From Macrostomum lignano (Eukaryota): 64,000 nucleotides of DNA. Every line of letters begins with the position of its first letter. Position 1 is the first letter of the stretch. The stretch spans positions 1 to 64,000 of the forward strand of contig NIVC01001511.1 of the NCBI GenBank assembly GCA_002269645.1, read 5' to 3'. Below, piece by piece: positions 17,278-44,631 of this stretch. Made by a program: the position numbers and the translations under genes. A model generated the notes under the pieces. The model made no database searches and was not told the DNA's origin. It saw only the letters and a program-made list of their open reading frames with translations.

Positions 17278-17594
17278 ATGAAAAATGAGAGACCAGTTGA
17301 TGCCAATCTGCCACTATTTTCAAGCATAATTATTCTGCTCAGTCTCACCAGCATCTCTATCATGAGTGGCCTATGTTTTTGCATCAAGATTCGCTCATTG
17401 TTTCACAAAGTCAAGAGTCCAGACACAACTACTGCCAGTGGAAAAAGTAGCAACAGAGCTGCTAAAAGACGCAGCACTGCTTCTGCCGATGGTAGCTTTG
17501 CTGGCAGTCACTGCTGCGCTGAGGAGGTCAATGCCAGTGGCTCAATAGATAGCAATGTTAGGCTTGTGGGCAGTTCAGAGGATCCAGATGATGT
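17278..17594 (+). CDS. Gene B coding exon 1: short N-terminus, TM helix, juxtamembrane CFC, basic stop-transfer
   Basis: tttcag|ATG at 17278; MKNERPVDAN-LPLFSSIIILLSLTSISIMSGLCFCI-KIRSLFHKVK; donor GT|GTAAGT at 17594 (phase 2). Confidence 0.75.
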
Positions 17595-17724
17595 GTAAGT
17601 TTTAAGTTCTTGACCATCTTGGCTTGAATGAATTTTATCTTATTGACCTTTTCCTAGACAGTAAATTGTAATAGAGAATTCTATTTTAAAAGTACAATGG
17701 GAACTTCCTAGAGACTTTTTTATC

Positions 17725-18070
17725 TAACCAATTCCCCCTGGACCCTTTAATTATCTGAGGAATTCTCCTGGACCTCTTAATTATCTGAGGACTTCCCCTG
17801 GACCCTTGGATATTTGAGGAATTCCACTGGTCCCTTTGATTATCTAAGGAATTCCCCCTGGACCCCTTAACTATCTGAGGAATTCCCGTGGACCTCTAAA
17901 TTATCTGAGGAATTCCCCTCGACTTCTTAATTATATGAGGAATTCCCCTGGACCTCTTAATTATACGAGGAATTCCTCGAGACCCCTTATTTATCTTATG
18001 GATAATTTTAGGAAGTTTAGGAATTCCTAAACCCTTAATTACAATATTTGAAGAATTCCACTGGTCTCTT
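17725..18070. repeat. Degenerate ~30-bp minisatellite (GAATTCCCCTGGACCTCTTAATTATCTGAG)
   Basis: Repeated aattcccc...ttatctgag units. Confidence 0.85.
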
Positions 18071-18289
18071 TAGTTATCTCAGAAACTCCCCTTAGCCTTT
18101 GGCCTTATCGATCTGGAAATTCCACGAAAGCATTTTCCATCTAGGGACATACAATCGGTTTTGTACGTCATAATTGCTACCTGTAGAAAACATTAGCTAT
18201 AGTAAGCTTTATTAATTCAGCCAAGATATTGATATTGAGCCAATGAGCGTCTGAAGATTCTCCTTGAGCTCTTACTAGTAATCTTAAAA

Positions 18290-18540
18290 AATCCCCTTTG
18301 ATCCCCTGCTAATCAGAGAAATTCCCCTTTGATCCCCTGCTAATCAGAGAAATTCCCCTTTGATCCCCTGCTAATCAGAGAAATTCCCCTTTGATCCCCT
18401 GCTAATCAGAGAAATTCCCCTTTGATCCCCTGTTTACCAGAGAAATTCCCCTTTGATTCCCTACTAATCAGAGAAATTCCCCTTTGATCCCCTGCTAATC
18501 AGAGAAATTCCCCTTTGATCCCCTGTTTACCTGAGAAATT
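18290..18540. repeat. 31-bp minisatellite (TTGATCCCCTGCTAATCAGAGAAATTCCCCT), ~8 units, ending at the exon-2 acceptor
   Basis: Period 31 (18301, 18332 and onward). Confidence 0.95.
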
Positions 18541-18562
18541 CCTCGGCCTCCCGCATCCGCAG

Positions 18563-18907
18563 GGACGCTAGCGCGGGAATCTACGAGACCACCGCCAGTC
18601 TGGACGGCCTGGACCATCGCTGCACCGTCGTGTCTGTCGGCGTCCATCACGGCTGCGCAACCAAAGCCGCAGACAACGGCATCAGTGCGGACTTGAGCAG
18701 TGTGGACTGTCGGGATCGTCACAGCGCTCTCGCTAGCAGCGGCGAGCCTCATAAATGGGTCAGCCTCCGAGAGAGCTTCATAGCCAGGCTTAGCGGACTG
18801 TCAGCGAGTGTGCAGCTGGGCCACCGCGGTCAGCGACAGTCCAACAACGGTGCTCACGCTGCGGTGCTGGATCCCGACGACTCCAATGAGCAGCTCGTTA
18901 GGCCGAG
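18563..18907 (+). CDS. Gene B exon 2
   Basis: Acceptor ccgcag|18563 completes V codon (DDV-DASAGIYETT...); donor AG|GTGCGT (phase 2). Confidence 0.75.
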
Positions 18908-18977
18908 GTGCGTTTCTTTGTAGCCGCTGGTTGAGTTGACTAGCGATCCTAAATTTGGGGATTTGGACCTACAGTTT

Positions 18978-19270
18978 TGAAAGGGATTTCGACCCACGGG
19001 ATTTCGATTTGGGATTTTGACGCGCGGGATTTCGATTTGGGATTTTGACGCGCGGGATTTCAATTTGGGATTTTGACCCAAAAGATTTCGATTTGGGATT
19101 TTGACCCACGGGATTTCGATTTGGGATTTTGACCCACGGGATTTCGATTTGGGATTTTGACGCGCGGGATTTCGCCTTGGGATTTTGACCCACGGGATTT
19201 CAATTTGGGATTTTGACCCACGGGATTTTGATTTGGGATTTTGACCCACGGGATTTCGATTTGTAATTTT
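18978..19270. repeat. 28-bp minisatellite (GGGATTTCGATTTGGGATTTTGACCCAC), related to the 4300-4700 array
   Basis: Shared GGGATTTCGA.TTGGGATTTTG core. Confidence 0.93.
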
Positions 19271-19794
19271 GACCTACAGTTTGGTTATGATATTAGGGAG
19301 CTTTCGTACTTACAGGACACAAATCTTTATCAAGATTTCCCATACGCATTGTATTCAAATCTGCATTTATAATGCCATATAAAAGTCCTGTTTAGCACAG
19401 CCAGGCCTCATAGGCCGCATAGATTCATATCTGCTGGATGTCTGTCCAAGCCGTCATAGGGGGCTTTACTAGCTTCAATGCTGTGTTTGCCGCACTTAAT
19501 GGGATATTTTGTGCATTTCAAATCCCAAAGGCTGGTTAGGCGGGGGGAGGGCTTGAATGCAGAATTTTCTTATCTACAGCTGACTGTACCGCCAGTTATG
19601 CGGGGGACTGGGAGGCGCAATAAAACGGCTGTTGGAGACACTTCAGGATAAATAAACATGAATTTTGCTTCCACTGTTTGGGATATGCGGCTTCGGATTA
19701 TAGCGACTCTGACGGGTGGCTGCGCTGTCTTTGCATCCGTACTGGCTTGTGCACTTTTATTTCGCAGTGTGGCTCGCTTGCATTTTATAGCGAT

Positions 19795-20420
19795 TTCAGA
19801 ATCGCCCCTCACCAACTCTGAATAATCGCCGTCTCACTAACTCTGAAGAATCGACCCTCACCAACTCTGAAGAATCGCCCCTCACCAACTCTGAAGAATC
19901 GCCCCTCACCAACTCTGAAGAATCGCCCCTCACCAACTCTGAAGAATCGCCCCTCACCAACTCTGAAGAATCGCCCCTCACCAACTCTGAAGAATCGCCC
20001 CTCACCAACTCTGAAGAATCGCCCCTCACCAACTCTGAATAATCGCCGTCTCACCAACTCTGAAGAATCGCCCCTCACCAACTCTGAATAATCGCCGTCT
20101 CACCAACTCTGAAGAATCGACCCTCACCAACTCTGAAGAATCGCCCCTCACCAACTCTGAAGAATCGCCCCTCACTAACTCTGAAGAATCGTCCCTCACC
20201 AACTCTGAAGAATCGCCCCTCACCAACTCTGAAGAATCGCCCCTCACCAACTCTGAATAATCGCCGTCTCACCAACTCTGAATAATCGCCGTCTCACCAA
20301 CTCAAGAATCTCCTCTCAGCAACTTAAGAATCGCCCCTCAGCAACTCAAGAATCGCCCCTCACCAACTCAAGAATCGCCCCTCACCAACTCAAGAATCGC
20401 CCCTCACCAACTCAAGAATC
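19795..20420. repeat. 24-bp minisatellite (TCACCAACTCTGAAGAATCGCCCC), shifting to 22-bp units near the exon-3 acceptor
   Basis: Tandem units are visible; source of the VRGDSSEL ORFs. Confidence 0.96.
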
Positions 20421-20442
20421 GCCCCGCCGCCCCCACCCGCAG

Positions 20443-21230
20443 CCTGGACACCCAGAAGTCGGTGCTGTCCACCAGAAGCCAGACAGACCGCGAGCTGCCC
20501 CCAGTGCCCGCCGCTGAAGCCGTGGACCTGCCACCCTCTGCCGCTTCGTCCTCGCCTCGCCTTCCGCCGCCGCCTCCCCCTCCCCCAGACTCCAGGGGCG
20601 CGCCATCATCCTGCGGACTGCTTCGCAGGCATCTGACCGACATCCCTTTGCCAGCTTTTGCCCAGCGCCTCGCCAACGGCTCGCTTCGCAAGCAGGCTCG
20701 AAACCCGAAGTCCGCCCAGCCCGTCCAGCCGCCTGTGGCGCCTCCTCTGTCGGCAGCATCGCCGCCAGCGCCCGCTGATGCTGCTGAAGCTTGCGCAGCT
20801 GACGCCCCGGTCACTGCGGAGGGCTTGCCGACTGCGGTGTCGGTGTACACCATCGACAGCGATCTGACCAGCGAGGCCGACCCACTGTACACCTCGCTGG
20901 GACCGGGACAGCAGCAGCAGCAGCAGGCTCAGCGAACTCAGCACCATAGCAACAGTGCAGCTGCTGGCCATCATCATCACCATGAACATATTTACGCCAG
21001 CATCAGCAGGGCTACCCCGCATCAGTACGACTCTGCGGCATCCGATTCCGACGGCTTGGGGACTGCCGCTGGATCCACCATCAATGCTGCTGCTGCTGCT
21101 CCCCCTCCGCTACCGCCGTTGCCAAGGCGTAACTATGGCCGCGAAGAGGTGGATAGGATTCTGCAGATGCAGCAACAGCAGCTGCAGCAGGGACCGACTT
21201 ACTATTCGAGTATCGAGTTGGATGCTAGTG
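20443..21230 (+). CDS. Gene B exon 3 (Pro/Gln/His-rich; LYTSL, IYASI, YYSSI motifs)
   Basis: Acceptor cccgcag|20443 phase 2 (RP-S-LDTQK); open frame throughout; donor G|GTAAAT (phase 1). Confidence 0.75.
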
Positions 21231-21299
21231 GTAAATTGCTCTATTGTGCATATATTTTGTCTGTTAGTTTCATATTTATAGAGTTAAAAGTAGATTAAG

Positions 21300-22080
21300 G
21301 GGATATAGATTGAATGAGTGGTAGATTGAAAGACAGGCAGATTGAGAGGTAGAGTGAGTGAGAGGTAGAGTGAGTGAGAGGAAGAGTGAGTGAGAGGAAG
21401 AGTGAGTGAGAGGAAGAGTGAGTGAGAGGAAGAGTGAGTGAGAGGAAGAGTGAGTGAGAGAGGTAGAGTGTGAGATAGGGAGAGTAATTGAAAGGCAGAG
21501 AGTTACTAACTCTCTATAGAGAGGTAGAGTGGGAGAGATGTAGAGTGGGAGAGAGGTAGAGTTTGAGAGAGATAGAGAGGGAGAGATGTAGATTGGGAGA
21601 GAGGTAGAGTGGGAGAGAGGTAGAGTGGGAGAGAGGTAGAGTGGGAGAGATGTAGAGTGGGAGAGAGGTAGAGCTTGAGAGAGGTAGAGAGGAAGAGATG
21701 TAGATTGGGAGAGAGGTAGAGTGGGAGAGATGTAGAGAGGAAGAGATGTAGATTGGGAGAGAGGTAGAGTGGGAGAGATGTAGAGTGGGAGAGAGGTAGA
21801 GTTTGAGAGAGGTAGAGAGGAAGAGATGTAGATTGGGAGAGAGGTATAGTGGGAGAGATGTAGAGTGAGAGAGAGGTAGAGTGAGGGAGACGTAGATTAA
21901 GTGAGAGGTAGAGTGGGGGAGATGTAGAGTGGGAGAGAGGTAGAGTGAGGGAGACGTAGATTGAGTGAGAGGTAGAGTGGGGGAGATATAGAGTGGGAGT
22001 TAGGTAGAGTGGGAGAGATGTAGAGTGGGAGAGAGGTAGAGTGAGGGAGACGTAGATTAAGTGAGAGGTAGTGTGAGGGT
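21300..22080. repeat. Purine-rich ~16-bp repeat (GAGAGGTAGAGTGGGA-like)
   Basis: GA-rich low-complexity tandem tract after the exon-3 donor. Confidence 0.9.
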
Positions 22081-22789
22081 CATGTTTCTCCTGAATCCAG
22101 GTCTGCAGTTTCCAATGCCTATTTTTATTGGCCACAGCGCGCATTGCAGTTGGTAACGCAGCTCAAATGTGCTCGAATATACTGAACTGCGGAGAAGTGA
22201 ATTCACTGAATTGAGTAAAATTTATTTTTCTGTTAAAAAGGCCTTTTCTTCCTGTGCCTTCTTCCTGTGCCTTCCTTATTGAAGCTGGCAATTTGCTCCG
22301 GAAAGTTCAAATTCTAATAAATTATCGGGGGTGGGAAATTAGAGTGAGCACATAATGATAGAAGCTTCTCTTATCACATATGCATATGTGTATTTGATTT
22401 AGTTCCGCCCTTATGAATTTCTGAGATTTATCAATTTTCTTTCTGGCAATTCCTCGCCCTAGCCAAGGGGAGGCTGCATGCTTTATATTTTCTTCAATCT
22501 CTTTCACAAGAGGAGTCTGTGATTAATTATTTTTTCTCCCGAGGATAGGCGATAGGCTGGTTGCGCTGGTTCCGGGATGAACTGTTGACTGTGCCACTGC
22601 TCTCACCCAGTGTGCACTCCGTGCCGTGTTGCTCCAGTCGCTTCGTCAACTTAGTTTGACCTCGCTAAGGTTCTCAGGCTCTTAGAGACTGAAGCTCTAA
22701 TGTACTCAAGCTCTCAGATACTCAAATACTCTTAGATACTTAGACTCTAAGATACTCAGACTCTAAAATCTCTGACACTCAGTCAGTAA

Positions 22790-25365
22790 GACACTCGGAA
22801 ACCATAGACTAAGACACTCGGACACTAAGAAAGCCATATAATAAGCCACTCGGACACTAGGAAACCCATAAACTAAGACACTCGGACACCAGGAAACCCA
22901 TAGAATAAGCCACTCGGACACTAGGAAACCCATAGACTAAGACACTCGGACACTATGAAACCCATAGAATAAGCCACTCGGACACTATGAAACCCATAGA
23001 CTAAGACACTCGGACACTAAGAAAGCCATATAATAAGCCAGTCGGACACTAGGAAACCCATAGACTAAGACACTCGGACACTAGGAAACCCATAAACTAA
23101 GACACTCGGACACTAAGAAACCCATAGACTAAGCCTATAGGACACTAGGAAACCCATAGACTAAGCCTATCGGACACTATGAAACCCATAGACTAGGACA
23201 CTCGGACACTAGGAAACCCATAGACTAAGACACTCGGACACTAAGAAAGCCATATAATAAGCCACTCGGACACTACGAAACCCATAGACTAAGACACTCG
23301 GACACTAGGAAACCCATAAACTAAGACACTCGGACCCCAGGAAACCCATAGACTAAGACACTCGGACACTAGGAAACCCATAAGACTAAGACACTCGGAC
23401 ACTAGGAAACCCATAGACTAAGACACTCGGACACTAGGAAACCCATAGACTAAGACACTCGGACACTAAGAAAGCCATATAATAAGCCACTCGGACACTA
23501 GGAAACCCATAAACTAAGACACTCGGACACCAGGAAACCCATAGAATAAGCCACTCGGACACTAGGAAACCCATAGACTAAGACACTCGGACACTAAGAA
23601 AGCCATATAATAAGCCACTCGGACACTACGAAACCCATAGACTAAGACACTCGGACACTAGGAAACCCATAAACTAAGTCACTCGGACACCAGGAAACCC
23701 ATAGACTAAGACACTCGGACACTAGGAAACCCATAAGACTAAGACACTCGGACACTAGGAAACCCATAGACTAAGACACTCGGACACTAGGAAACCCATA
23801 GACTAAGACACTCGGACACTAAGAAAGCCATATAATAAGCCACTCGGACACTAGGAAACCCATAAACTAAGACACTCGGACACCAGGAAACCCATAGAAT
23901 AAGCCACTCGGACACTAGGAAACCCATAGACTAAGACACTCGGACACTATGAAACCCATAGAATAAGCCACTCGGACACTATGAAACCCATAGACTAAGA
24001 CACTCGGACACTAAGAAAGCCATATAATAAGCCACTCGGACACTAGGAAACCCATAGACTAAGACACTCGGACACTAGGAAACCCATAAACTAAGACACT
24101 CGGACACTAAGAAACCCATAGACTAAGCCTATAGGACACTAGGAAACCCATAGACTAAGCCTATCGGACACTATGAAACCCATAGACTAGGACACTCGGA
24201 CACTAGGAAACCCATAGACTAAGACACTCGGACACTAAGAAAGCCATATAATAAGCCACTCGGACACTACGAAACCCATAGACTAAGACACTCGGACACT
24301 AGGAAACCCATAAACTAAGACACTCGGACACCAGGAAACCCATAGACTAAGACACTCGGACACTAGGAAACCCATAAGACTAAGACACTCGGACACTAGG
24401 AAACCCATAGACTAAGACACTCGGACACTAGGAAACCCATAGACTAAGACACTCGGACACTAAGAAAGCCATATAATAAGCCACTCGGACACTAGGAAAC
24501 CCATAAACTAAGACACTCGGACACCAGGAAACCCATAGAATAAGCCACTTGGACACTAGGAAACCCATAGACTAAGACACTCGGACACTATGAAACCCAT
24601 AGAATAAGCCACTCGGACACTATGAAACCCATAGACTAAGACACTCGGACACTAAGAAAGCCATATAATAAGCCACTCGGACACTAGGAAACCCATAGAC
24701 TAAGACACTCGGACACTAGGAAACCCATAAACTAAGACACTCGGACACCAGGAAACCCATAGACTAAGACACTCGGACACTAGGAAACCCATAAGACTAA
24801 GACACTCGGACACTAGGAAACCCATAGACTAAGACACTCGGACACTAAGAAAGCCATATAATAAGCCACTCGGACACTAGGAAACCCATAAACTAAGACA
24901 CTCGGACACCAGGAAACCCATAGAATAAGCCACTCGGACACTAGGAAACCCATAGACTAAGACACTCGGACACTATGAAACCCATAGAATAAGCCACTCG
25001 GACACTATGAAACCCATAGACTAAGACACTCGGACACTAGGAAACCCATAAGACTAAGACACTCGGACACTAGGAAACCCATAGACTAAGACACTTGGAC
25101 ACTAGGAAACCCATAGACTAAGACACTCGGACACTAGGAAACCCATAAACTAAGACACTCGGACACCAGGAAACCCATAGAATAAGCCACTCGGACACTA
25201 GGAAACCCATAGACTAAGACACTCGGACACTAGGAAACCTATAGACTAAGACACTCGGACACTAGGAAACCCATAGACTAAGACACTCGGACACTAGGAA
25301 ACCCATAGACTAAGACACTCGGACACTAGGAAACACATAGACTAAGACACTCGGACACTAAAAGA
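22790..25365. repeat. 32-bp satellite (GGACACTAGGAAACCCATAGACTAAGACACTC), ~80 units with higher-order structure
   Basis: Unit variants recur; the rare AAGCCTATAG block sits at 23131 and 24125. Confidence 0.97.
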
Positions 25366-25612
25366 CAGACGGCCCGGACAGACTATAATCCTCTCAATTT
25401 TGTAAGCCAGTCACCCAGTTTTATAGTTAGCCACAAAAGTGCGTTTCTCTTCTGTGTCTGGTTTAGACTTTATGCCTAAAGCTGTAAAGGATGAGCTGAC
25501 GCAAGCTGACTGGTAGATGAATCGATTTTCTCCGTTCGCGGTCACAGCTGTGATGTTAGGGAGCGGCTCTGGTTTATCACGAATGTTTGGACCGAGGAGA
25601 TTTTGAAATATA

Positions 25613-33804: not shown

Positions 33805-34108
33805 CAACAACAATAATGATTGATTACACCTGCCCCAATTGAGCCAGATGTGCAACCGACAGCTCAGCCGCAGCTGTTGCGCGCCGCATCTGAAGGCTGC
33901 GTACGGCTGTTCAGTCCAAGGACTGGGGGGGGGGTCGCCACACACAGCCTCAATTACCCCAGCTAATGCTGGCACCCATTTTACAGCTGGGTGAACTGAA
34001 GCAATGCAGAGTTAAGTGTCTTTTGCTCAAGGACACAAATTGTTCCGAGTGGGTCGAGAATCGAACCCCCGACCTTTCAGTCGTGAGTCCGACGCTCACG
34101 ACTACAAC
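33805..34108 (-). mobile_element. tRNA-derived CORE-SINE, copy 1
   Basis: Minus strand: B box GGTTCGATTC, CORE-like TGTGTCCTTGAGCAA..GACACTTAACTC...CAGCTGTAAAATGGG (compare MIR core TGTGACCTTGGGCAAGTCACTTAAC...CTGTAAAATGGG), and (ATT/GTT)n tail. Confidence 0.88.
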
Positions 34109-36239
34109 GATACAACGATAGTAAGCAAGCATAAACGCGAAGGCACAATTCTACTAGCAATACACATGCATATAAGGTTTGCTTTGCTGGTAGTGGGAAA
34201 AATGGACGGGAAATATTGAAGAAACTGGAGTCGGATACGGTGCGAGCTGAAAAAGTGCAGATCGCAGATCAGCAGGCAGATGGTTTCGCGTGTTCGACCA
34301 CAAGGCCTGCGTAGACAGATGCTGGAATCGGATGAATAATAGTATCAGTATCGTGCGAATATGGATCACATATTCCCGCGAGGGGGGATTTCAAAATGCA
34401 AGCAGAAGGTTTTAACTTGGAGCTGCCTCTTTGACGAAAAAAGCCTTATGTATAGTGTAAGCTCTTTTCTGTCCAGCATGCCTAGCAAACCTCATCACAG
34501 AATAACCACCAGAGCAACTGCAGCCAGCGAGGATAGGCCTGTTTGCTAACTGTTACAAGTAACGCCATATAATAACCAATGACTACAGGCTGTTGTAATT
34601 TTTGCTACAGCCTGTCAATCTAGCTAGTTATACAATCTACAGTCTAATGTACAGCCATTCAGCTGGTTGGATCTTTTGAATTGCAGAGGCGCGCTGCTGA
34701 ACTGGCAGTTATAGTCTATGGCCTGCCCTCTTGACCGCGCTAGCAGTAAATATGTATAAGATATTCTGCTCGAGGGATTTAACTGAAATACTGACCTCAA
34801 ACCCATGGAATATCTTATTTAAACTACTTTAATTTTGCGGGATGTATTCAGATAAATCCCGGAGCCATACTTGTATGTCTATGGTTGAAGTTGGGGATGG
34901 GGTGTGGGGCGAAGCCCCCACATTCTTACCATAGACAAAATTTCATTAAGAAATTTCTCGAGTCACGAAGGAAGAGAAGAGAGAAGCTCGCTTATTTAGT
35001 TACATACAATAATCCTTGCAATATATCCGGGAAAGTGATCGATTAAATCCCGCAAAATAAAATCTATGCCAATAACCTCCCTGAAAGTGAGCTTTAAAGT
35101 GGTTTAAATTTTTATAATTATTGCGTTTCATGAAGACGAATTTGTCAAGTCGTTTTTGCCGTTTTTTGGCCATAGACAACACAAGTTTAGCTTCAGCATT
35201 ATCGAAGGGTCCCACTTGTCAATGACAAGTCTAAAAAATTCAAAATTCTATGTTTCATAGCCAAGGTTATAGCCTTGGAAGAAGGACTGTAGGGCCTAGG
35301 TTGACCCATACACTGCGCAACTATAGGGTGGGAACTACACGCCAACCGCCCGGCCAATTTTCGTGCGCGAGCCCCAAATGAATAAATGAGTTTTAGAGTG
35401 CACTGAATCCTGCAAATTTATGGACACGAAACGTTTTATAGACGATTTGTGCGAAGTAAAATCCAACTTTTATCCCAGCTAGCGCTGGACATTCCAGTCT
35501 TGGCGTTGCACCAGGAATTTGGGTTAAAATCCTGCCGCATTTCTTTATAAACGAAAGTATTTGCCGCAAGGATTTACAGTCAGGCATTTTGCTTCCATCA
35601 TTCCGGCATTTCACGTGCCTTGGCTCACTGCCAGTGGATGGGGAGCGGCTTCTGCGCCCACAACCGCCGCCCCACTCCTAACCAAGGATGCCTCCTGTGA
35701 ACTAGGTAGTGCATAGTATCCAGGCCACGCGGCATTCTCCAAGCTAGTAGATTTCGACAAGTTAAGCTGAAGAGTGAAGCGAAGACGAAATTTCCGGCTC
35801 TAAGAAGAAATGTCAAAACTGGACCATGCGCCTCACCCTGCTGAAGAATGCATGGAGACAGGGAGAGAAATATAATTATAATTCTACTAAAGTGCAGTTC
35901 CGATATTGATTATGATTATATATTGACGGCCACGGAGTTTGGCCTATCTATCATCAATGCATCGATTGATTGATTAATTGTTTTTGCATGCAAGCTGCAG
36001 AAAAGAGTGACAACTCAGCGCTAAACAAACAAGAAAAAAATTTCCCTTGTTGAAATTCTGTTCCTGTTGCATAAGCAGCAAGTTATAACAGATTTTTTGA
36101 ACCAATGAATTTTTAGGCTAGTAGATTTTGCTAAGTTCATTAGCGTTTTATGACTAATATTTTCTGAAACTGTCCCTCTTCTCTGCATTCTCTTCTCCCC
36201 CTCAAAATCTCCTCCATTTCTGGCATTTCACTGAGCCCT

Positions 36240-36850
36240 CTACCCCTCTGCCCTCTCTCTATCATCTGACCTTCTCCCCTCTGCCTTCCCTCTCCCCTCT
36301 GCCTCCCTCTACCCTCTGCCTCCCTCTCCCCTCTGCCACCCTCTCCCCTCTGCCTCCGTCTCTCCTCTTCCCTCCCTCTCCCCTCTTCCCTCCCTCTCCC
36401 CTCTGCCTTCCCTATCCCCCTCTGCCCTCCCTCTCCCCCTCTGCCCTCCCTCTCCCCTCTGCCCTCCCTCTCCCCCTCTGCCTTCCCTCTCCCCTCTGCC
36501 CTCCCTCTCCCCTCTGCCTTCCCTATCCCCCTCTGCCCTCCCTCTCCCCTCTGCCCTCCCTCTCCCTCTGCCCTCCCTCTCCCTCTGCCCTCCCTCTCCC
36601 CTCGTCCCTCCCTCTCCCCTCTGCCTTCCCTATCCCCCTCTGCCCTCCCTCTCCCCTCTGCCCTCCCTCTCCCCTCTGCCCTCCCTCTCCCTCTGCCCTC
36701 CCTCTCCCCCTCTGCCCTCCCTCTCCCCCTCTGCCCTCCCTCTCCCCTCTGCCCTCCCTCTCCCCCTCTGCCTTCCCTCTCCCCTCTGCCCTCCCTCTCC
36801 CCTCGTCCCTCCTCCTCTCTGCCCTCCCTCTGCCCCTCTGCTCGGCCTCT
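36240..36850. repeat. Pyrimidine-rich ~18-20-bp repeat (CTCTGCCCTCCCTCTCCC)
   Basis: Tandem TC-rich units. Confidence 0.93.
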
Positions 36851-37752
36851 TTCCCTCTACTTTCCCGCTGCGTATCTCTCGCATCTGCAGTCTCGTATTC
36901 TGCAAGGTTACAGTTATTTGGCTAACTTTTTAGCCATGAAAACTTCCAGATTTTAGAATAATTTCAACTTTCTGGCCAAATCTTTCTGGTCTGCATTAAC
37001 GTTAAAATTTCTGGTTAATCTGTAAGCTTCGACGCAGTGCCTTCTTAATTGCTGAACTGATTAAAAAAGTTTTGCTACATTTTTATAAGAAAAGCTTTTA
37101 TTCAATTAATTGGTCTCTTAATGATGTTAAAAGTTGAAAAAATCGCAGAAAATCTGGATCTGCAACAGCTAAACTTATTTCAACTATAGTTAAACTGATG
37201 AGGTGAATCAACAGAGAGAGAGGCAATAACCTTTCACTCGGGCATTTGGGTCTCGCAAAAGCTGCCACCTTCATAAATACTGAATAGAGTGGATGAGGCA
37301 TTCTCGCCCCATAAACTCTGGCCTGACAGTGAAAGCAGAATGCGTGCGAGAGCGAGAAAAAGTCAATCAAGGACACGGCCCAGCTGACTACGCTAAACTA
37401 TGCGCAGAGAAATGATGCCTTTAACTTGCTAGTCTAGCTGACTGTTCTGAAATATAATTATGAGGAAATTGATCCAGGGAGAGAGTGGAGTGAAGCCGAA
37501 GATGATGGAGCATATATGAAACATCTATGCTGTCCAGCATCCTGACTTCGCTGATGTAAAAAATCGCAAATTCACTTAGGATTCTACTTTAACTTGAAGC
37601 TGTTCGTGGTATGCTGTAAGGAGCACTTCTAGACTAATGTCTGAGTGAATTCCTTCTACTAATTAGACCCTAAGAATCACGTTCTTGATTTATATAGCAG
37701 CTGCATAACGGACAGGTGACGTTATAGAACAGAGTTGGAGAGTGGGAGATGG

Positions 37753-37846
37753 GACTGACTGACTGACTGACTGACTGACTGACTGACTGACTGACTGACT
37801 GACTGACTGACTGACTGACTGACTGACTGACTGACTGACTGACTGA
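37753..37846. repeat. (GACT)n microsatellite
   Basis: Seen directly. Confidence 0.98.
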
Positions 37847-38359
37847 CAAGACAACAAACATATACAGAAAAGTCTGTCAGCTTGTTATTATAAACATACT
37901 TAACAAACCGGCAGCACTGAAAGCACCAGCATATGTTGGGATACTACAAGTATAAACTGTATAGTGCAAGTCTACGCTTATCATCCGTGACTCATCAATC
38001 GATTTGGACATCTGCCTGGCTAGTGCAGCTATCTCTGCTGCCCATCTCCAATGTTGAAGCCGCATGATATGCATTCTGGGGCCCATTCTGTCTCGCCCAG
38101 CGCCTTCCTGATCCCTGTTTGCCAATGCTTGTGCGAGGCGGGGTTCTGCCGGCTTCATTTCAACGCTTGTTCCTCATCGGTTACTCTAGCTGACTATAGT
38201 GTACGTCTATTTCTTAGCAAGCAGTCAGCGTGTTCCATGCCAGTCCTGCTGCGTCGTCGCTTCTCTCTTTCTTGTTTTCTGTAACAGTTTTGTTCACTAT
38301 TCTCTGATAGTTCCTTGAGGGCATGTTACTAAGCCGCCCAGCGCTAAAGCCGCAGATAA

Positions 38360-38600
38360 TGCTACTAGCAGTAATGGTGTATTTGTAATTGTAATTTCAG
38401 CACAAATAACTAGCAATCAGCGCCCCTTGTTGGGGAGCAAAAAAATGCAGTACAAGTTTTTTTAATAAACTATGAGTATCTTCTCATTGCAATAACCTCA
38501 GCAATCCCTTATTAAGCCTTGGCATCACCGCAATCCCCCCCACGAGCCTTAACATATCAACTTCCCCCCTTAACATCTCAGCGATGACCCCAATAAGCCT
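38360..38600. repeat. Unclassified interspersed repeat related to 15290-15640 (and a short match near 55285-55310)
   Basis: Shared AACTAGCAATCAGC.CCCC.TGTTG and AGCCTT.ACAT.TCAAC blocks. Confidence 0.55.
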
Positions 38601-38615
38601 TGGGCCTTGAGCCTT

Positions 38616-38670
38616 GTAGTAGTAGTAGTAATAGTAGTAGTAGTGGTAGTAGTAGTAGTAGTAGTAGTAA

Positions 38671-38723
<53 letters not shown>

Positions 38724-38724
38724 A

Positions 38725-38755
<31 letters not shown>

Positions 38756-38790
38756 CGTAGTAGTTGTAGTAGTAGTAAAAGTAGTAGTAA

Positions 38791-38837
<47 letters not shown>

Positions 38838-38949
38838 ATAGTAATAGTAGTAGTAGTAGTAGTAGTAGAAGTAGTAGTAGTAGTAATAGTAATAGTAGTA
38901 GTAGTAGTAGAAGTAGTAGTAATAGTAATAGTAGTAGTAGTAGTAGTAG
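38616..38949. repeat. (TAG)n microsatellite with TAA variants
   Basis: Seen directly; source of the poly-L/S/V ORFs. Confidence 0.98.
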
Positions 38950-39904
38950 TTTTGACAAACGGCAGAGAGAATCGCTAATCATGTACGGGGAATCGGGGAT
39001 AGAGTCAGACCAGGCTACTGTCCTGTGCCCTCAGAGGTCAGTATTATTCATAATATGTACTACCGGCACAGACAGGCAGCAGCTGGCTCAGGCCCGCCTC
39101 CGTGACCTTCGCGCCAACAAGCCAGCACGTTTTGCTTATCTTATCTTCTATTTTTCTTATCGTCTACATGTAGTTTTGCCGCACAGACAGGCAGGCAGAC
39201 CGAGGCAGACTCATGGGTGAATGAAAAATGAAGCCACGGGAGTCAGAGAAACACATCGATTGGCTGCTTCAATTATATTTCTTTTTCTGTCTGTCTGTCT
39301 TCTCTCTGCACTGAATTGCCAAAATGTGTTAGCGCGGACCAAGGAGTTCATAGAGGAAGAATCCGGAGCCATTCCAGATTCTCTTTTTAGTATACCATGG
39401 ACGGTGCTGGCATTTTAGGGACGGCTGCCTCCTTACGTCTAGCTTTTAGACTCTTTAGCTAGTTAAATAGTTTCAAAGGCAATGGTGCTCATTAAAACTG
39501 CGTAAAGACTCTATTTGTTTGATCATAGAGCTAAGCCTGTTTTATTGATCCATTTCATTTCCCTATCAAGTTGGTTTTACGTTACCTTTGACCTCATCGA
39601 ACAAGGCTTTCTTTGCCATTACTTTGTTGTTTACACTGCAATTAGTCAGCTTCTTGGTGTGTCCCGCTAGCTGGATTTCAGAAAACTTATTAATGTTGTT
39701 CTAAGTAGAGTTGGCTGATTATCAGTTATACCCGCTCCATTAACTACCATGAACTAAGAAAGTTTGTTTATATTTTGCTATGGCCGAAGCTAAAATGCAG
39801 TATTGCTACTAGAAGTAGGATAAAAATTATTTATTATATAAGCGCCTCTGACTGGTTTTGTCATGTCACATAGTGATGTCTAAATAAAATTCTTAGTGGA
39901 ACCA

Positions 39905-40022
39905 ACAATTAGTTAGCTAGTTACTTAGTTAGTTAGTTAGTTGGTTAGTTAGTTAGTTGGTTAGTTAGTTAAGTTAGTTAGTTGGTTAGTTGGTTAGTTA
40001 GTTAGTTAGTTAGTTGGTTAGT

Positions 40023-40067
<45 letters not shown>

Positions 40068-40074
40068 GGTTAGT

Positions 40075-40143
<69 letters not shown>

Positions 40144-40390
40144 GGTTAGTTAGTTAGTTAGTTAGTTGGTTAGTTAGTTAGTTAGTTAGTTGGTTAGTTA
40201 GTTAGTTAGTTAGTTAGTTGGTTAGTTAGTTAGTTGGTTAGTTAGTTGGTTAGTTAGTTAGTTGGTTAGTTAGTTGGTTAGTTGGTTAGTTGGTTAGTTA
40301 GTTAGTTGGTTAGTTGGTTAGTTAGTTGGTTAGTTGGTTAGTTAGTTAGTTGGTTAGTTAGTTGGTTAGTTGGTTAGTTACTTATTTAGC
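39905..40390. repeat. (GTTA/GTTG)n microsatellite
   Basis: Seen directly. Confidence 0.98.
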
Positions 40391-40495
40391 TAGGTAATTA
40401 TTCTCGTAGTTAACAGATTTTATTGAGTTGATAACAATCGTAGACATAATTTAAAAGTAAAAACACCCGCCTCCTCCCTGCTGAAACTCTCCCAG

Positions 40496-40903
40496 ACGCT
40501 TCAACAGCCGAACCTCATCATCAGCCTCCGCCCGCCGCCGCCCAGCCGCCTCGGTTGCCGCTGATGGAGGCGGCCGAAGCCGCGACACCGGCCGAGTACC
40601 AGCGAGTGACGGTGCGCGAGAGCCTCGCCAGCCTCCGGGCTCGCAACGCCCTGCCGATGCCGCTGTCTGAGCGGCTGGCACAGCTGGGGCAGCAGCAGCA
40701 GCGACTCCCAAGCTCATCCCGCAGCGCCTCCAACCGACCGCTGCAGCTGGCCTCTCACGGCTCCGAGGCCGCTGTCGCCGAGTCCGACTCGCTGTACGAA
40801 GACATCTACTTCAACGATGTGCCAAGCGTGCCGGCTGCTTCCGCCGCTTCTGCGACTGCTGCCGACTCCTACTCTGATCTGTACTCTGAGTTCAACATGG
40901 ACG
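40496..40903 (+). CDS. Gene B exon 4 (EYQRV, SLYEDI, SYSDLYSEF)
   Basis: Acceptor ctcccag|40496 phase 1 matches exon 3; donor G|GTGAGA (phase 1). An alternative phase-2 acceptor at 40457 is possible. Confidence 0.65.
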
Positions 40904-41039
40904 GTGAGAGAGGAGAGGCGAGAGAGCGGGGATGCAAGCTGAATGGGTGGGGGAGAAGGGCAAGCTGGTTGGGGTGGGCGATATGAAATATACAGCTGTA
41001 GACTGGACACTCCTATATACGTACTAGACATCTCAGAAA

Positions 41040-42590
41040 CCAAAGATACCTCTAACAGTAAAGACACCCCTAGCACTAAGACACTGAAGACACCCCAGAC
41101 ACTGAAGACACCCCAGATACTAAAGACATCCCAGACACTGAAGACACCCCAGACACTGAAGACACCCCAGACACTAAAGACACCCCAGACACTGAAGACA
41201 CCCCAGATACTAAAGACATCCCAGACACTGAAGACACCCCAGATACTAAAGACATCCCAGACACTAAAGACACCCCAGACACTGAAGACACCCCAGACAC
41301 TAAAGGCACCCCAGACACTGAAGACACCCCAGATACTAAAGACATTCCAGACACTGAAGACACCCCAGATACTAAAGACATCCCAGACACTAAAGACACC
41401 CCAGACACTGAAGACACCCCAGACACTAAAGACACCCCAAGATACTAAAGACATCCCAAGATACTAAAGACACCCCAATATACTAAAGACATCCCAGATA
41501 CTAAAGACACCCCAGACACTGAAGACACCCCCAGACACTGAAGACACCCCAGATACTAAAGACATCCCAGACACTGAAGACACCCCAAGATCTAAAGACA
41601 CCCCAAGATACTAAAGACACCCCAGACACTAAACACATCCCAGACACTGAGGACACCCCAAGATACTAAAGACACCCCAGACACTGAAGACATCCCAAAT
41701 ACTAAAGACACCCCAGACACTGAAGACACCCCAGACACTGAAGACACCCCAAGATACTAAAGACATCCCAAGATACTAAAGACATCCCAAGATACTAAAG
41801 ACATCCCAAGATACTAAAGACACCCCAGACACTGAAGACACCCAAGATACTAAAGACATCCCAAGATACTAAAGACATCCCAAGATACTAAAGACATCCC
41901 AAGATACTAAAGACATCCCAAGATACTAAAGACACCCCAGACACTAAAGACACCCCAGACACTGAAGACATCCCAAAATACTAAAGACACCCCAGACACT
42001 GAAGACACCCCAAGATACTAAAGACACCCCAAGATACTAAAGACACCCCAGACACTGAAGACACCCCAAGATACTAAAGACACCCCAAGATACTAAAGAC
42101 ACCCCAAGATACTAAAGACACCCCAAGATACTAAAGACATCCCAAGATACTAAAGACATCCCAAGATACTAAAGACATCCCAAGATACTAAAGACACCCC
42201 AGACACTAAAGACACCCCAGACACTGAAGACACCCCAAGATACTAAAGACACCCCAGAACTGAAGACATCCCAAAATACTAAAGACACCCCAGACACTGA
42301 AGACACCCCAAGATACTAAAGACACCCCAAGATACTAAAGACACCCCAGACACTGAAGACACCCCAAGATACTAAAGACACCCCAGACACTGAAGACACC
42401 CCAGACACTGAAGACACCCCAGACACTGAAGACACCCCATATACTAAAGACACCCCAAGATACTAAAGACACCCCAGACACTGAAGACACCCCAGACACT
42501 GAAGACACCCCAGACACTGAAGACACCCCAGATACTAAAGACACCCCAAAATACTAAAGACACCCCAGACACTGAAGACACCCCAAAACC
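41040..42590. repeat. 18-20-bp minisatellite (GACACCCCAGACACTGAA / GACATCCCAAGATACTAAA) filling intron 4 of gene B
   Basis: Tandem units; source of the TLKTPQ ORFs. Confidence 0.97.
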
Positions 42591-42664
42591 TCAGACACGT
42601 CAAATCACAAGCTACTAAGATCTCCAAGTCCAAAGTCAGGGCTTCCTCCTCCTCCCCTCGCCAG

Positions 42665-42955
42665 GCGTCTCCGAGTCCATCGCCAGCTCGCTTTCATCGC
42701 TTCACCGCCTGCCCGGCGCCCGGCGGCCTCCTCCGCGGCCTCCGCCGCCGCCGCCGCCGCCTCCGCCGTCATCCAGCAGGGGAGGCCCGGCCGCCGCGTC
42801 TTCGGCAGCAAGCGACGGCAGCCGCCGGTTCAGCTACCACGGTGGCGGCCGCGGCGGCGCCGCTGCTACTTCCAGCACAAGTGCGAGGCAACCGCAATAC
42901 GCCAATGTCTGCATGCTGAATGAGATTAATAGCTTTCGGCATATGGATAGCGATG
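42665..42955 (+). CDS. Gene B exon 5 (poly-Pro, QYANV)
   Basis: cgccag|42665 phase 1: G-VSESIASSLSSLHRLPGARRPPPRPPPPPPPPP...PQYANVCMLNEINSFRHMDSD; donor G|GTAAGT. This exon is absent from the ORF track because it has no start codon. Confidence 0.7.
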
Positions 42956-42969
42956 GTAAGTTTGTCTCG

Positions 42970-43420
42970 GGATTGGGATGAATCATGAAGGAGTCTTAGG
43001 ATTGGGATAAATCATGAAGGAGTCCCAGAATTGGGATAAATCATGAGGGAGTCTTAGGATTGGGATAAATCATGAAGGAGCCTTGAACTTGGGATAAATC
43101 ATGAAGGAGCCTTGAACTTGGGATAAATCATGAAGAAGTCTTGAACTTGGGATAAATAATTAAGGAACCTTGAAATTGGGATAAATCATGAGGGAGTCTT
43201 AGGATTGGGATAAATCATGAAGGAGTCTTGAAATTGGGATAAATCATGAAGGAGCCTTGAACTTGGGATAAATCATGAAGGAGCCTTGAACTTGGGATAA
43301 ATCATGAAGGAGTCTTGAACTTGGGATAAATAATTAAGGAACCTTGAAATTGGGATAAATCATGAGGGGGTCTCAGGATTGGGATAAATCATGAGGGGGT
43401 CTCAGGATTGAGATAAACCA
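42970..43420. repeat. 29-bp minisatellite (TTGGGATAAATCATGAAGGAGTCTTAGGA)
   Basis: Period 29 (42973, 43002); starts ~15 nt after the exon-5 donor. Confidence 0.95.
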
Positions 43421-43886
43421 TGTGGCTTCATGGATCGCTCATGTTGATATTCGACTGCTATTGTCTGCTAGCAGTAGTCGTATGCAAACATAAAAATATC
43501 TGAAGCCGTACCCGCTATCTGTATTCATTCAAACGCTGGTAGATGACAGCTGCAGTTCGTTGGCAGCGCAACTGACGGCGAATCTGCAGTTCGCCCGGAC
43601 CTCTTCGCAATGCCGCTTTAAAATGCGACCGCATTCGACTGTGGCGGTTTTCACTTTTTATTGACAAGCTGTCATCATTCAGATATGTTCAATATTGAAC
43701 CACACTTTTCTCTGTTGGTGATTCAAAATCAGTTGGCTGTGCTTCATTCAACTACTTGAATATATTTTCTTACGTTGTCAATCGTTACGCACTTTTATTA
43801 CGGTGGTGGAGATATCACCATATTCTTATTTATTGTCACAATTGAATTCCTTCTGTTATTGAATCAGGTGCTACCAAGTGAGTCAA

Positions 43887-44360
43887 GTGCTTATCGGGTG
43901 AGGGAGTGGGGTGGGTGCTTATCGGGTGAGGGAGTGGGGTGGGTGCTTATCGGGTGAGGGAGTGGGGTGGGTGCTTATCGGGTGAGGGAGTGGGGTGGGT
44001 GCTTATCGGGTGAGGGAGTGGGGTGGGTGCTTATCGGGTGAGGGAGTGGGGTGGGTGCTTATCGGGTGAGGGAGTGGGGTGGGTGCTTATCGGGTGAGGG
44101 AGTGGGGTGGGTGCTTATCGGTGAGGGAGTGGGGTGGGTGCTTATCGGGTGAGGGAGTGGGGTGGGTGCTTATCGGGTGAGGGAGTGGGGTGGGTGCTTA
44201 TCGGGTGAGGGAGTGGGGTGGGTGCTTATCGGGTGAGGGAGTGAAGTGGGTGCTTATCGGGTGTGGGAGTGGGTGGGTGCTTATCGGGTGAGGGAATGGG
44301 GTGGGTGCTTATCGGGTGAGGGAGTGAAGTGGGTGCTTATCGGGTGAGGGAGTGGGTGGG
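43887..44360. repeat. 28-bp G-rich minisatellite (GTGCTTATCGGGTGAGGGAGTGGGGTGG), ~17 units
   Basis: Period 28; four GGG tracts per unit. Confidence 0.97.
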
Positions 44361-44395
44361 CGCATGCCACTGACGCCCTCCGATCCGCCCCGCAG

Positions 44396-44631
44396 TGGAC
44401 CTGGCGACAGCCTCGGCAGCGGAGCAGCTGCACCAGCAGCTCGGCCAGCCCGGCGCCTCCTCAGCCCGCCAGTCGGTGCCGCACTCCCGCTCAGCCAATC
44501 ATCTGCAGTTGACGCCGCGTCATGCCGTCATGACTCCGCTGATGGAGCGTTCGATCGAGGGCTCACTATTTGAGTCCGGTTTCGGTGGCAATGGCGGCTC
44601 CTCAGACTACGAGCGGCTGTCAGTGCTGTAG
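44396..44631 (+). CDS. Gene B exon 6 (terminal SDYERL; stop TAG, or splice at 44618)
   Basis: cgcag|44396 phase 1 (DSD-V-DLATASAAEQ); reads to TAG 44629-44631. CT|GTCAGT at 44618 is an alternative donor. The six exons total 2385 nt = 795 codons. Confidence 0.65.

What the first reader, a model, noticed from the sequence alone, without database searches (positions are those of the whole stretch)
17278..44631. Candidate invertebrate transmembrane adaptor (LAT/PAG-like architecture) spread over 27 kb
Seen: six phase-compatible exons give ~794 aa with a ~10-aa N-terminus, one TM helix ending in GLCFC followed by basic residues, then a domain-free Pro/Ala/Gln-rich tail. The tail has about nine YxxPhi motifs (LYTSL, IYASI, YYSSI, EYQRV, LYEDI, SYSDL, LYSEF, QYANV, DYERL); two (SLYEDI, SDYERL) fit the ITIM consensus (S/I/V/L)xYxx(I/V/L). 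Poly-Pro SH3/WW-type ligands are also present. Known: this layout (minimal ectodomain, palmitoylatable juxtamembrane Cys pair, many SH2-docking tyrosines) defines vertebrate lymphocyte TRAPs (LAT, NTAL, PAG/Cbp, LIME). Inference: a convergent or ancient tyrosine-kinase scaffold in an invertebrate, invisible to domain-based annotation and to the ORF track.
Basis: partly seen in the sequence, partly recalled or inferred. Interest (0 to 1): 0.75.

Follow-up and report, generated by a model that had tools for sequence, protein, structure and literature searches.

The report
Flatworm membrane-anchored tyrosine-motif scaffold gene
The six exons are a real gene of the flatworm Macrostomum lignano. 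It encodes a membrane-anchored, otherwise unstructured protein whose conserved tyrosine and proline motifs make it look like a docking platform for Src-type kinases, a kind of protein so far known only from vertebrates.

Summary
The window is Macrostomum lignano.

- **Architecture:** a 10-aa N-terminus, the only hydrophobic helix, a CFC pair plus basic residues, then a tail predicted to be about 82% disordered. No Pfam domain matches.
- **Refutation tests, none met:**
  - A paralog has the same six-exon layout.
  - Orthologues in cestodes and trematodes all start 4-16 aa before the helix. An Echinococcus transcript has an in-frame stop upstream of its ATG.
  - Tyrosine is the best-conserved residue type (75% against 36% overall). 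The tyrosine and proline motifs are nearly collinear across the phylum.
- **Family:** flatworm-only as far as HMMER sees, and unnamed in the databases.
- **Motif content:** it resembles PAG/Cbp (YSSV/I-type, YEx[VI]-type, SH3 ligands), not LAT. No sequence homology to any vertebrate adaptor was found.
- **ITIM reading:** at chance level and not conserved.

The function as a kinase scaffold is inferred, not shown.

The parts
17272..17277 (+). TTTCAG acceptor directly in front of the ATG; candidate spliced-leader trans-splice (or 5'UTR-intron) acceptor
   Evidence: Sequence read. It fits the M. lignano trans-splice acceptor motif [T/C]TNCAG (PMC8629364). The paralog has CTTCAG 11 nt before its ATG. 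An in-frame TAA lies 5 codons upstream of the ATG. Not confirmed by reads.
17278..17594 (+). Exon 1: start codon, 10-aa N-terminus, transmembrane helix (aa 11-36, nt 17308-17385), Cys33/Cys35 (17374-17382), basic stretch KIRSLFHKVK
   Evidence: 100% identical to P0001 residues 1-106. AlphaFold2 gives helix 11-43 at pLDDT 88-96.
18563..18907 (+). Exon 2: GIYETT (18576-18593) and predicted helix LRESFIARL (18765-18791)
   Evidence: Matches P0001. LR[EA]SF[IL]ARL is conserved in the paralog.
20443..21230 (+). Exon 3: RELPPVP (20489-20509), LLRRHLTDIPLP, SVYTIDSDLTSEADPLYTSL (20840-20899), HIYASI (20987-21004), PPLPRRNYGREEVDRIL (21113-21163), YYSSI (21200-21214)
   Evidence: Motifs conserved in the paralog and across flatworms.
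40496..40903 (+). Exon 4: EYQRVTVRESLASLRARNALP (40594-40656, the most conserved motif of the family), SLYEDIY (40789-40809), DSYSDLYSEF (40864-40893)
   Evidence: The invariant columns of the 9-species alignment lie here. Predicted helix 523-534 has pLDDT about 87.
42665..42955 (+). Exon 5: poly-Pro run, RRFS (42823-42834), QYANV (42895-42909), MLNEINSFRHMDSD
   Evidence: P0012 matches it. The phase-1 intron after FRHMDSD is shared with Echinococcus.
44396..44631 (+). Exon 6: MTPLMERSIEGSL (44530-44568), DYERLSVL (44605-44628), stop TAG 44629-44631 inside the first unit of a 15-bp minisatellite

Best explanation
The six exons encode a real, conserved, flatworm-specific membrane protein with the N-terminus outside and the C-terminus inside.

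**Inferred mechanism**
1. The single N-terminal helix anchors the protein in the membrane. The Cys pair at its cytoplasmic end (CFC here) is probably palmitoylated.
2. The 750-aa cytoplasmic tail is unstructured. It works as a string of short docking motifs.
3. Two proline motifs have the form of SH3 ligands: RELPPVP (class I form) and PP[LVI]PxR (class II form).
4. At least seven conserved tyrosine motifs are phosphorylated by Src-family or related kinases and then bind SH2 proteins. They come in two flavours:
   - Y[AS][SQ][VI] (LYTSL/LYASV, YYSSI/V, [IV]YA[SQ][IV]) resembles the Csk-SH2 site YSSV of PAG/Cbp.
   - [DE]YEx[VIL] (SLYEDIY, DYEGVY, DYERIY) resembles the Src-SH2 motif YEEI/V.
5. 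Three predicted or candidate helical motifs without tyrosine chemistry bind further, unknown partners: VRESLASLRARNALP, L.E[MI]..FR[HY][MV]DS[DE] and MTPLMERS.

**Status of each step.** Gene structure, architecture, disorder, motif conservation and phyletic range are shown. Membrane orientation, palmitoylation, tyrosine phosphorylation and SH2/SH3 recruitment are inferred. In function it is closest to PAG/Cbp among vertebrate transmembrane adaptors. It is not a detectable sequence relative of them.
For: - **Gene model:**. Existing models and the paralog support it. The paralog locus has the same six exons.
- **Phyletic range:** the exhaustive HMMER search found 18 hits. The family-profile search again returned only named flatworms plus two unnamed MetaClust entries, P0010 and P0038.
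- **N-terminus:** short N-terminus, helix, then C.C/CC and basic residues in Macrostomum, Heterobilharzia, Clonorchis, Opisthorchis, Paragonimus, Hymenolepis and Spirometra; Echinococcus has only a single Cys before KKRKK (SCFKKRKK, no Cys pair).
- **Transcript evidence in an orthologue:** the Echinococcus contig L004 aligns to the genome in 13 blocks and has an in-frame TAG 5 codons before its ATG.
- **Neighbourhood:** no gene is called within 10 kb upstream in three orthologous or paralogous loci.
- **Tyrosine conservation:** 12 of 16 tyrosines are identical in the paralog against 36% overall, hypergeometric P=0.0015.
- **Motif order:** the motif table is nearly collinear over 12 sequences.
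- **YxxPhi enrichment:**
- **Disorder:** only helices 11-43, 170-184, 454-469, 523-534 and 540-550 are predicted, and 652 of 794 residues have pLDDT below 50.
- **Literature:** PAG/Cbp is described with an N-terminal helix, two palmitoyl sites, YEEI/V Src-SH2 motifs and a YSSV Csk-SH2 site (PMC3492796). Schistosoma mansoni has 6 Src, 1 Csk, 2 Syk and 2 Abl kinases (PMC3135232).
Against: - No experimental or transcript data exist for this locus itself.
- Phosphorylation, palmitoylation and SH2/SH3 binding are untested.
- YxxPhi is also the AP-2 sorting signal.
- Acidic residues before the tyrosines are not significantly enriched in most orthologues.
- In Macrostomum YYSSI lies after the PPLPxRxY motif; in parasitic flatworms it lies before it.
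- In cestodes the hydrophobic stretch is only about 14-16 aa and is followed by a polar insert that is retained in the mRNA. Membrane topology there is less clear.
- The most conserved motifs (VRESLASLRARNALP, FRHMDSD, MTPLMERS) do not depend on tyrosine chemistry, so the core function may lie elsewhere.
Confidence: 0.55

Rival explanations
1. Trafficking protein. The YxxPhi motifs and acidic clusters are clathrin-adaptor (AP-2/AP-1) sorting signals. The protein is an endocytic or endosomal cargo or cargo adaptor rather than a phosphotyrosine scaffold.
For: YxxPhi is enriched and conserved, and that consensus is shared with mu-subunit sorting signals (established knowledge). The short-ectodomain, single-pass layout also fits.
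Against: Seven or more conserved tyrosine motifs far exceed what sorting needs. The motifs fall into SH2-class flavours (YEx[VI], Y[AS]S[VI]). They sit beside two conserved SH3-type ligands.
Confidence: 0.15
2. Scaffold that works mainly through its non-tyrosine helical motifs (VRESLASLRARNALP, FRHMDSD, MTPLMERS, LRESFIARL). It would tether a cytoskeletal, junctional or Ser/Thr-kinase complex to the membrane. The tyrosines would be hydrophobic contact residues, not phosphosites.
For: The invariant columns of the family alignment lie in Yxx[IV][TS]VRESLASLRARNALP and in the Y-E of the YEx[VI] motif. The predicted helices have pLDDT 80-87. An RRFS basophilic-kinase site is shared by both Macrostomum paralogs and the unnamed P0010.
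Against: It does not explain why tyrosine is the best-conserved residue type in disordered stretches. It does not explain the SH3-ligand forms either. No known partner motif matches these helices. UniProt's 'Cadherin_C' label for two fragments is not reproduced by Pfam.
Confidence: 0.17
3. The hydrophobic N-terminus is a cleaved signal peptide and the Pro/Ala/Ser-rich tail is secreted.
For: The hydrophobic segment is N-terminal. No signal-peptide predictor could be run.
Against: The segment is about 26 residues long and AlphaFold2 models it as one helix, 11-43. It is followed by Cys residues and a +3 basic cluster. Its sequence SIM[ST]GLC[FL]C is conserved between paralogs that are 36% identical overall. 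The tail carries cytoplasmic-type motifs.
Confidence: 0.05
4. It is the cytoplasmic part of an ordinary receptor whose ectodomain exons lie further upstream and were missed.
For: An AG acceptor sits directly before the ATG. Sequence alone cannot exclude an upstream coding exon.
Against: - An in-frame TAA lies 5 codons upstream of the ATG.
- Only transposon remnants lie upstream.
- The models of seven genera start within 16 aa of the helix.
- The Echinococcus transcript has an upstream in-frame stop.
- The acceptor fits the trans-splice motif.
Confidence: 0.03

Closest known systems
PAG/Cbp (PAG1), the vertebrate Csk-binding transmembrane adaptor
   Same: Both have a very short ectodomain, an N-terminal helix, juxtamembrane cysteines and a long domain-free tail. 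The tail carries about 9-16 tyrosines, including YEx[VI]-type (Src-SH2-like) and YSS[VI]-type (Csk-SH2-like) motifs plus proline-rich SH3-type ligands. The features of PAG are taken from PMC3492796.
   Different: No sequence similarity is detectable: no Pfam family, PAG included, matched 23 family sequences at E<=10. The Cys spacing is CxC/CC rather than CxxC (own knowledge). Conserved helical motifs (VRESLASLRARNALP, FRHMDSD, MTPLMERS) have no counterpart in PAG. The family is restricted to flatworms. Function is untested.
LAT / NTAL (LAT2) / LIME, lymphocyte transmembrane adaptors
   Same: They share the same general layout of short ectodomain, helix, palmitoylatable cysteines and tyrosine motifs.
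   Different: LAT-type signalling rests on several YxN (Grb2/Gads) sites (own knowledge). Here there is a single YxN (QYANV), absent from the paralog and not conserved. The tail is 3-4 times longer. No sequence match was found.
Uncharacterised flatworm proteins ('Expressed conserved protein', Echinococcus granulosus CDS24149.1; Clonorchis CSKR_101251; Opisthorchis T265_04818; Hymenolepis VUZ39864.1; Heterobilharzia CAH8626054.1; Macrostomum BOX15_Mlig002805g1)
   Same: These are true homologues, with E-values from 1e-6 to 1e-248. They have nearly collinear motifs, the same N-terminal layout and a shared phase-1 intron after FR[HY][MV]DS[DE].
   Different: None has a described function. Region lengths between motifs and low-complexity content differ. 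The Macrostomum copy ends early, in a minisatellite.

Membership tests
PAG/Cbp family (Pfam PAG) | Sequence match to the family profile | tested here: not met
   hmmscan against Pfam-A at E<=10 found no adaptor family in the window protein or in 22 other family sequences, full-length or fragmentary. A PDB profile search found nothing relevant.
Transmembrane adaptor proteins (functional class: PAG, LAT, NTAL, LIME) | Very short ectodomain and a single N-terminal membrane helix without a signal peptide | tested here: met
   10 aa precede the only hydrophobic segment. Orthologue models of seven genera have 4-16 aa. The Echinococcus transcript has an in-frame stop upstream of its ATG. Absence of signal-peptide cleavage could not be tested.
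Transmembrane adaptor proteins (functional class) | Juxtamembrane cysteines that are palmitoylated | tested here: inconclusive
   Cysteines at the cytoplasmic end of the helix, followed by basic residues, occur as CFC, CLC, CFCC, CLYC or CC in all examined genera but Echinococcus, which has a single Cys (SCF). Palmitoylation itself is not testable here.
Transmembrane adaptor proteins (functional class) | Domain-free cytoplasmic tail with several conserved tyrosine-based motifs | tested here: met
   No Pfam domain. 82% of residues have pLDDT below 50. 75% of tyrosines are conserved against 36% overall. Seven nearly collinear tyrosine motifs occur across flatworms. YxxPhi numbers 9 against 2.67 expected.
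Transmembrane adaptor proteins (functional class) | Tyrosine phosphorylation by Src/Syk kinases and recruitment of SH2 proteins | not testable with these tools
   Only motif resemblance (YEx[VI], Y[AS]S[VI]) and the presence of Src, Csk and Syk kinases in flatworms (PMC3135232).
LAT/NTAL type | Several conserved YxN (Grb2/Gads) sites | tested here: not met
   One YxN (QYANV, aa 698), not aligned to any tyrosine in the paralog and absent from the family motif table.
ITIM-bearing inhibitory molecules | Conserved (S/I/V/L)xYxx(I/V/L) | tested here: not met
   2 matches against 0.68 expected, p about 0.15. The -2 residue of the SLYEDI site is T, A, A, S, S, P or H in orthologues. The SDYERL site is AGYDRL in the paralog.
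Classical cadherin cytoplasmic domain (Pfam Cadherin_C), suggested by UniProt names of P0004 and P0011 | Match to the Cadherin_C profile | tested here: not met
   No hit at E<=10 for P0004, P0011 or the window protein. The ASSLSSL-like stretch occurs only in Macrostomum.

The most novel reading that the evidence does not exclude
Flatworms have their own raft-type transmembrane adaptor that brings Src-family kinases and Csk together at the membrane, as PAG/Cbp does in vertebrates. It would be the first such adaptor outside vertebrates. It would have arisen independently or diverged beyond recognition, and it would fill the open question of how Csk is recruited to membranes in invertebrates.
Probability: 0.3. 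Interest if true: 0.8.

Novelty: new variant of a known kind. Interest (0 to 1): 0.6.

Why it matters
Transmembrane adaptors of the LAT/PAG type are treated as a vertebrate, largely immune-cell, invention.

A phylum-wide flatworm protein with the same architecture and a PAG-like motif set would show that this signalling solution arose at least twice, or is much older than thought. It would also offer a candidate membrane anchor for Csk/Src regulation in invertebrates.

The family is present in major parasites (Echinococcus, Clonorchis, Opisthorchis, Paragonimus, schistosomatids, Hymenolepis) and has no detectable host homologue. It is therefore also of interest for parasite signalling biology.

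It illustrates that conserved short-motif proteins escape domain-based annotation. Every database entry for this family is 'hypothetical' or carries a spurious automatic name.

Tried and rejected
- **Spliced model look-up.** I did not pursue it by other means.
- **Source of P0010.** The contig of this unnamed homologue is not on record.
- **Solved structures.** The PDB profile search gave only chance hits with E above 0.6.
- **Pfam.** No domain was found in any family member.
- **Cadherin tail.** The 'Cadherin_C' lead came from UniProt names and from a resemblance of DSYSDLYSEFNMDGVSESIASSLSSL to the catenin-binding core of cadherins (recalled, not tested). I rejected it: there is no profile match and the stretch occurs only in Macrostomum.
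- **Other automatic names.** 'SH2', 'Protein kinase', 'RING-type', 'PUM-HD' and 'Velvet' for fragments are not reproduced by Pfam.
- **ITIM reading.** Rejected.
- **LAT-like YxN reading.** Rejected.
- **Missing C-terminal exon.** A search for one matching the paralog's last 66 aa found nothing.
- **Fold search.** Not run, because the model is disordered and its matches would be meaningless.
- **Homology beyond flatworms.** One exhaustive HMMER search and two profile word-index searches found none.
- **Literature.** No top-ranked paper combined 'transmembrane adaptor protein' with a flatworm term.


Full report
**1. What is in the sequence**

Extending each to its open stretch and reading the DNA at the ends gives six exons with canonical sites:

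| Exon | Window coordinates |
|---|---|
| 1 | 17278-17594 |
| 2 | 18563-18907 |
| 3 | 20443-21230 |
| 4 | 40496-40903 |
| 5 | 42665-42955 |
| 6 | 44396-44631 |

Every acceptor ends in CAG. The donors are GTAAGT, GTGCGT, GTAAAT, GTGAGA and GTAAGT. The introns are 968, 1535, 19265, 1761 and 1440 nt. They are largely minisatellites and a 2.4-2.6 kb unit repeated three times.

**2. Whose gene it is**

A search with the concatenated exons identifies the window as Macrostomum lignano, a free-living flatworm.
- P0001 (UniRef A0A1I8HGS9, 466 aa) reproduces exons 1-3, including both junctions.
- P0012 reproduces exons 5-6.
- P0002 and P0006 are a second, about 84-91% identical copy.
- P0003 (NCBI BOX15_Mlig002805g1, 770 aa) and its fragments are a paralog about 36% identical that covers the whole length.
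- The paralog's locus has the same six exons in the same order over 13.9 kb.

The exons therefore belong to one transcript unit.

**3. The N-terminus**

The ATG at 17278 follows directly on TTTCAG, and an in-frame TAA lies five codons upstream. The paralog has CTTCAG 11 nt before its ATG.

About 30% of M. lignano genes receive a spliced leader at an acceptor with the motif [T/C]TNCAG, and the leader ends in ATG (PMC8629364). Both acceptors fit that motif. This is an inference, not a read-based result.

Stronger evidence comes from relatives. Gene models in Heterobilharzia, Clonorchis, Opisthorchis, Hymenolepis, Echinococcus and Spirometra start with a methionine 7-16 residues before the hydrophobic helix, and Paragonimus has an internal methionine 4 residues before it.

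For Echinococcus granulosus a 2175-nt contig (L004) encodes the whole 635-aa protein without interruption. It aligns to the genome in 13 blocks, so it is a spliced transcript. It has an in-frame TAG five codons before the ATG.

No gene is called within 10 kb upstream in the Macrostomum paralog, Clonorchis or Echinococcus loci. In the window the upstream DNA holds only a reverse-transcriptase remnant and a mariner-type remnant. A large ectodomain is therefore very unlikely.

**4. Architecture**
- There is a single hydrophobic segment, residues 11-36. The flanking charge is 0 on the N side and +3 on the C side, which by the positive-inside rule puts the tail in the cytoplasm.
- AlphaFold2, run with the 9-sequence family alignment, gives one confident long helix (11-43, pLDDT 88-96). 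It also gives short helices at 170-184, 454-469, 523-534 and 540-550. For 652 of 794 residues pLDDT is below 50.
- No Pfam family matches at E<=10.
- The end of the helix, SIM[ST]GLC[FL]C, is conserved between the paralogs. That argues against a mere signal peptide.
- Cysteines followed by basic residues recur in all genera: CFCWNKK, CFCCKR, CLYCVRFK, FCCFKKQKK, ACCIRR; Echinococcus has only a single Cys, SCFKKRKK.

**5. Is the motif content more than chance, and is it conserved?**
- Nine of 16 tyrosines are YxxPhi against 2.67 expected. None of 2000 shuffles reached nine.
- In a global alignment with the paralog, tyrosine is the best-conserved residue type: 12 of 16, or 75%, against 36% overall (hypergeometric P=0.0015).
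- An exhaustive HMMER search of 1.84 billion representatives with a three-sequence profile found 18 proteins at E<=0.001. Every hit that carries an organism name is a flatworm, and four (P0010, P0018, P0021, P0022) are unnamed.
- A nine-sequence profile search added Clonorchis and Paragonimus. No hit carried a non-flatworm name; two (P0010, P0038) are unnamed MetaClust entries.

Across these species the same motifs recur in nearly the same order:

| Motif | Note |
|---|---|
| ELPPVP | proline motif |
| [DE]x[DES][PGA]LY[AST][SAC][VLI] | tyrosine motif |
| PYYS[SNQ][ILV] | tyrosine motif |
| [VLI]YA[QSRG][VI] | tyrosine motif |
| PP[VLI]PxRxY | proline plus tyrosine |
| Yxx[IV][TS]VRES[LI]A[SN]LRARNALP | nearly invariant |
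| [DE]YEx[VIL] | tyrosine motif |
| SDxYxE[IL] | tyrosine motif |
| L.E[MI]..FR[HY][MV]DS[DE] | no tyrosine chemistry |
| MTPLMERS | no tyrosine chemistry |

One order difference exists. YYSSI lies after the PPLPxRxY motif in Macrostomum and before it in parasitic flatworms.

The phase-1 intron directly after FR[HY][MV]DS[DE] is shared by both Macrostomum paralogs and Echinococcus. The Opisthorchis model P0036 and the unnamed P0010 break off at the same place.

**6. How it most likely works**

The anatomy is that of a membrane-anchored docking strip.
- RELPPVP has the class I SH3-ligand form (+xPhiPxPhiP). PP[LVI]PxR has the class II form (PxPhiPxR). Both assignments rest on established consensus knowledge.
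- The tyrosine motifs fall into two flavours:
  - Y[AS][SQ][VI] is literally YSSV in the opisthorchiids and Paragonimus and YSSI in Macrostomum and cestodes.
  - [DE]YEx[VIL] is the other.
- PAG/Cbp is described as having an N-terminal helix, two juxtamembrane palmitoyl sites and nine tyrosines, with YEEI/V motifs for Src SH2 domains and YSSV for the Csk SH2 domain (PMC3492796).
- Flatworms have the needed enzymes. Schistosoma mansoni has 6 Src, 1 Csk, 2 Syk, 2 Abl and 1 Tec kinases (PMC3135232).

I therefore consider a PAG/Cbp-like scaffold for Src-family kinases and SH2/SH3 partners the best explanation (confidence about 0.55). Nothing beyond motif form and conservation supports phosphorylation or binding.

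The most conserved motifs of all (VRESLASLRARNALP, FRHMDSD, MTPLMERS) have no known counterpart and point to additional, unknown partners.

**7. What is not supported**
- **ITIM reading:** two matches against 0.68 expected, and the -2 residue varies among orthologues.
- **LAT-like reading:** the single YxN site is not conserved.
- **Homology to vertebrate adaptors:** none is detectable.
- **UniProt automatic names** for fragments of this family (Cadherin_C, RING-type, SH2, Protein kinase, PUM-HD, Velvet, Pecanex-like): not reproduced by Pfam.

**8. Novelty and verdict**

The family exists in databases only as 'hypothetical', 'unnamed' or 'expressed conserved' proteins. No top-ranked paper in the held library combined 'transmembrane adaptor protein' with a flatworm term.

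The gene and its architecture are real and conserved. The functional class, transmembrane adaptor, is known, but this is a new and unrelated family of it, restricted to flatworms as far as can be seen. Interest is moderate to high and depends on experimental proof of tyrosine phosphorylation and SH2 recruitment.

Noticed in passing
window 44616-44817: The gene's stop codon (44629-44631) and its last four codons (LSVL) lie in the first unit of a 15-bp minisatellite (GCTGTCAGTGCTGTA, 13.5 copies). Every unit carries the in-frame TAG. The paralog continues for 66 more residues after the homologous GYDRL, and no counterpart exists downstream in the window. Both Macrostomum paralogs still end in S-x-L, a class I PDZ-ligand form.
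   Followed up: partly
window 17595-44395 (introns): The introns are mostly tandem arrays: 32 bp x80 (22790-25360), 18 bp x82 (41079-42585), 24 bp x26 (19798-20425, ending 17 nt before exon 3) and 28 bp x17 (43887-44360, ending 35 nt before exon 6). A 2.35-2.65 kb unit is repeated three times at about 25.6-33 kb and shows strong G-over-C skew.
   Followed up: partly
window 12301-14396: Degraded retrotransposon on the + strand. It matches the reverse-transcriptase domain (Pfam RVT_1, E=3.9e-22) and is spread over several reading frames.
   Followed up: partly
window 6049-7109: Remnant of a Mos1/mariner-type transposase (HTH_48 and HTH_32 matches), split over two ORFs.
   Followed up: partly
window 49795-50256: A separate downstream exon or ORF encodes an F5/8 type C (NedA-like galactose-binding) domain. 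It probably belongs to a lectin-like gene together with the ORF at 49467-49829.
   Followed up: partly
L003 10102-10135 and L004 187-190 (Echinococcus granulosus orthologue): A 34-bp mini-intron interrupts the region coding for the membrane helix. The mature mRNA keeps a polar insert (RNDNGKSSS) between a 14-16-aa hydrophobic stretch and the single Cys and basic cluster, as in Hymenolepis. Cestode topology may therefore differ from Macrostomum and trematodes.
   Followed up: partly
L003 19125-27835; proteins P0015, P0029: In Echinococcus the next gene downstream is an L1/neurofascin-like molecule (weak Bravo_FIGEY match). Some database models fuse it to the adaptor-like gene, giving 1270-1482-aa chimeras.
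   Followed up: no
window 3003-3530: ORF of 175 aa with a Pro/Ala-rich N-terminus and two hydrophobic segments. It has no Pfam match and may be the first exon of an unrelated upstream gene.
   Followed up: no
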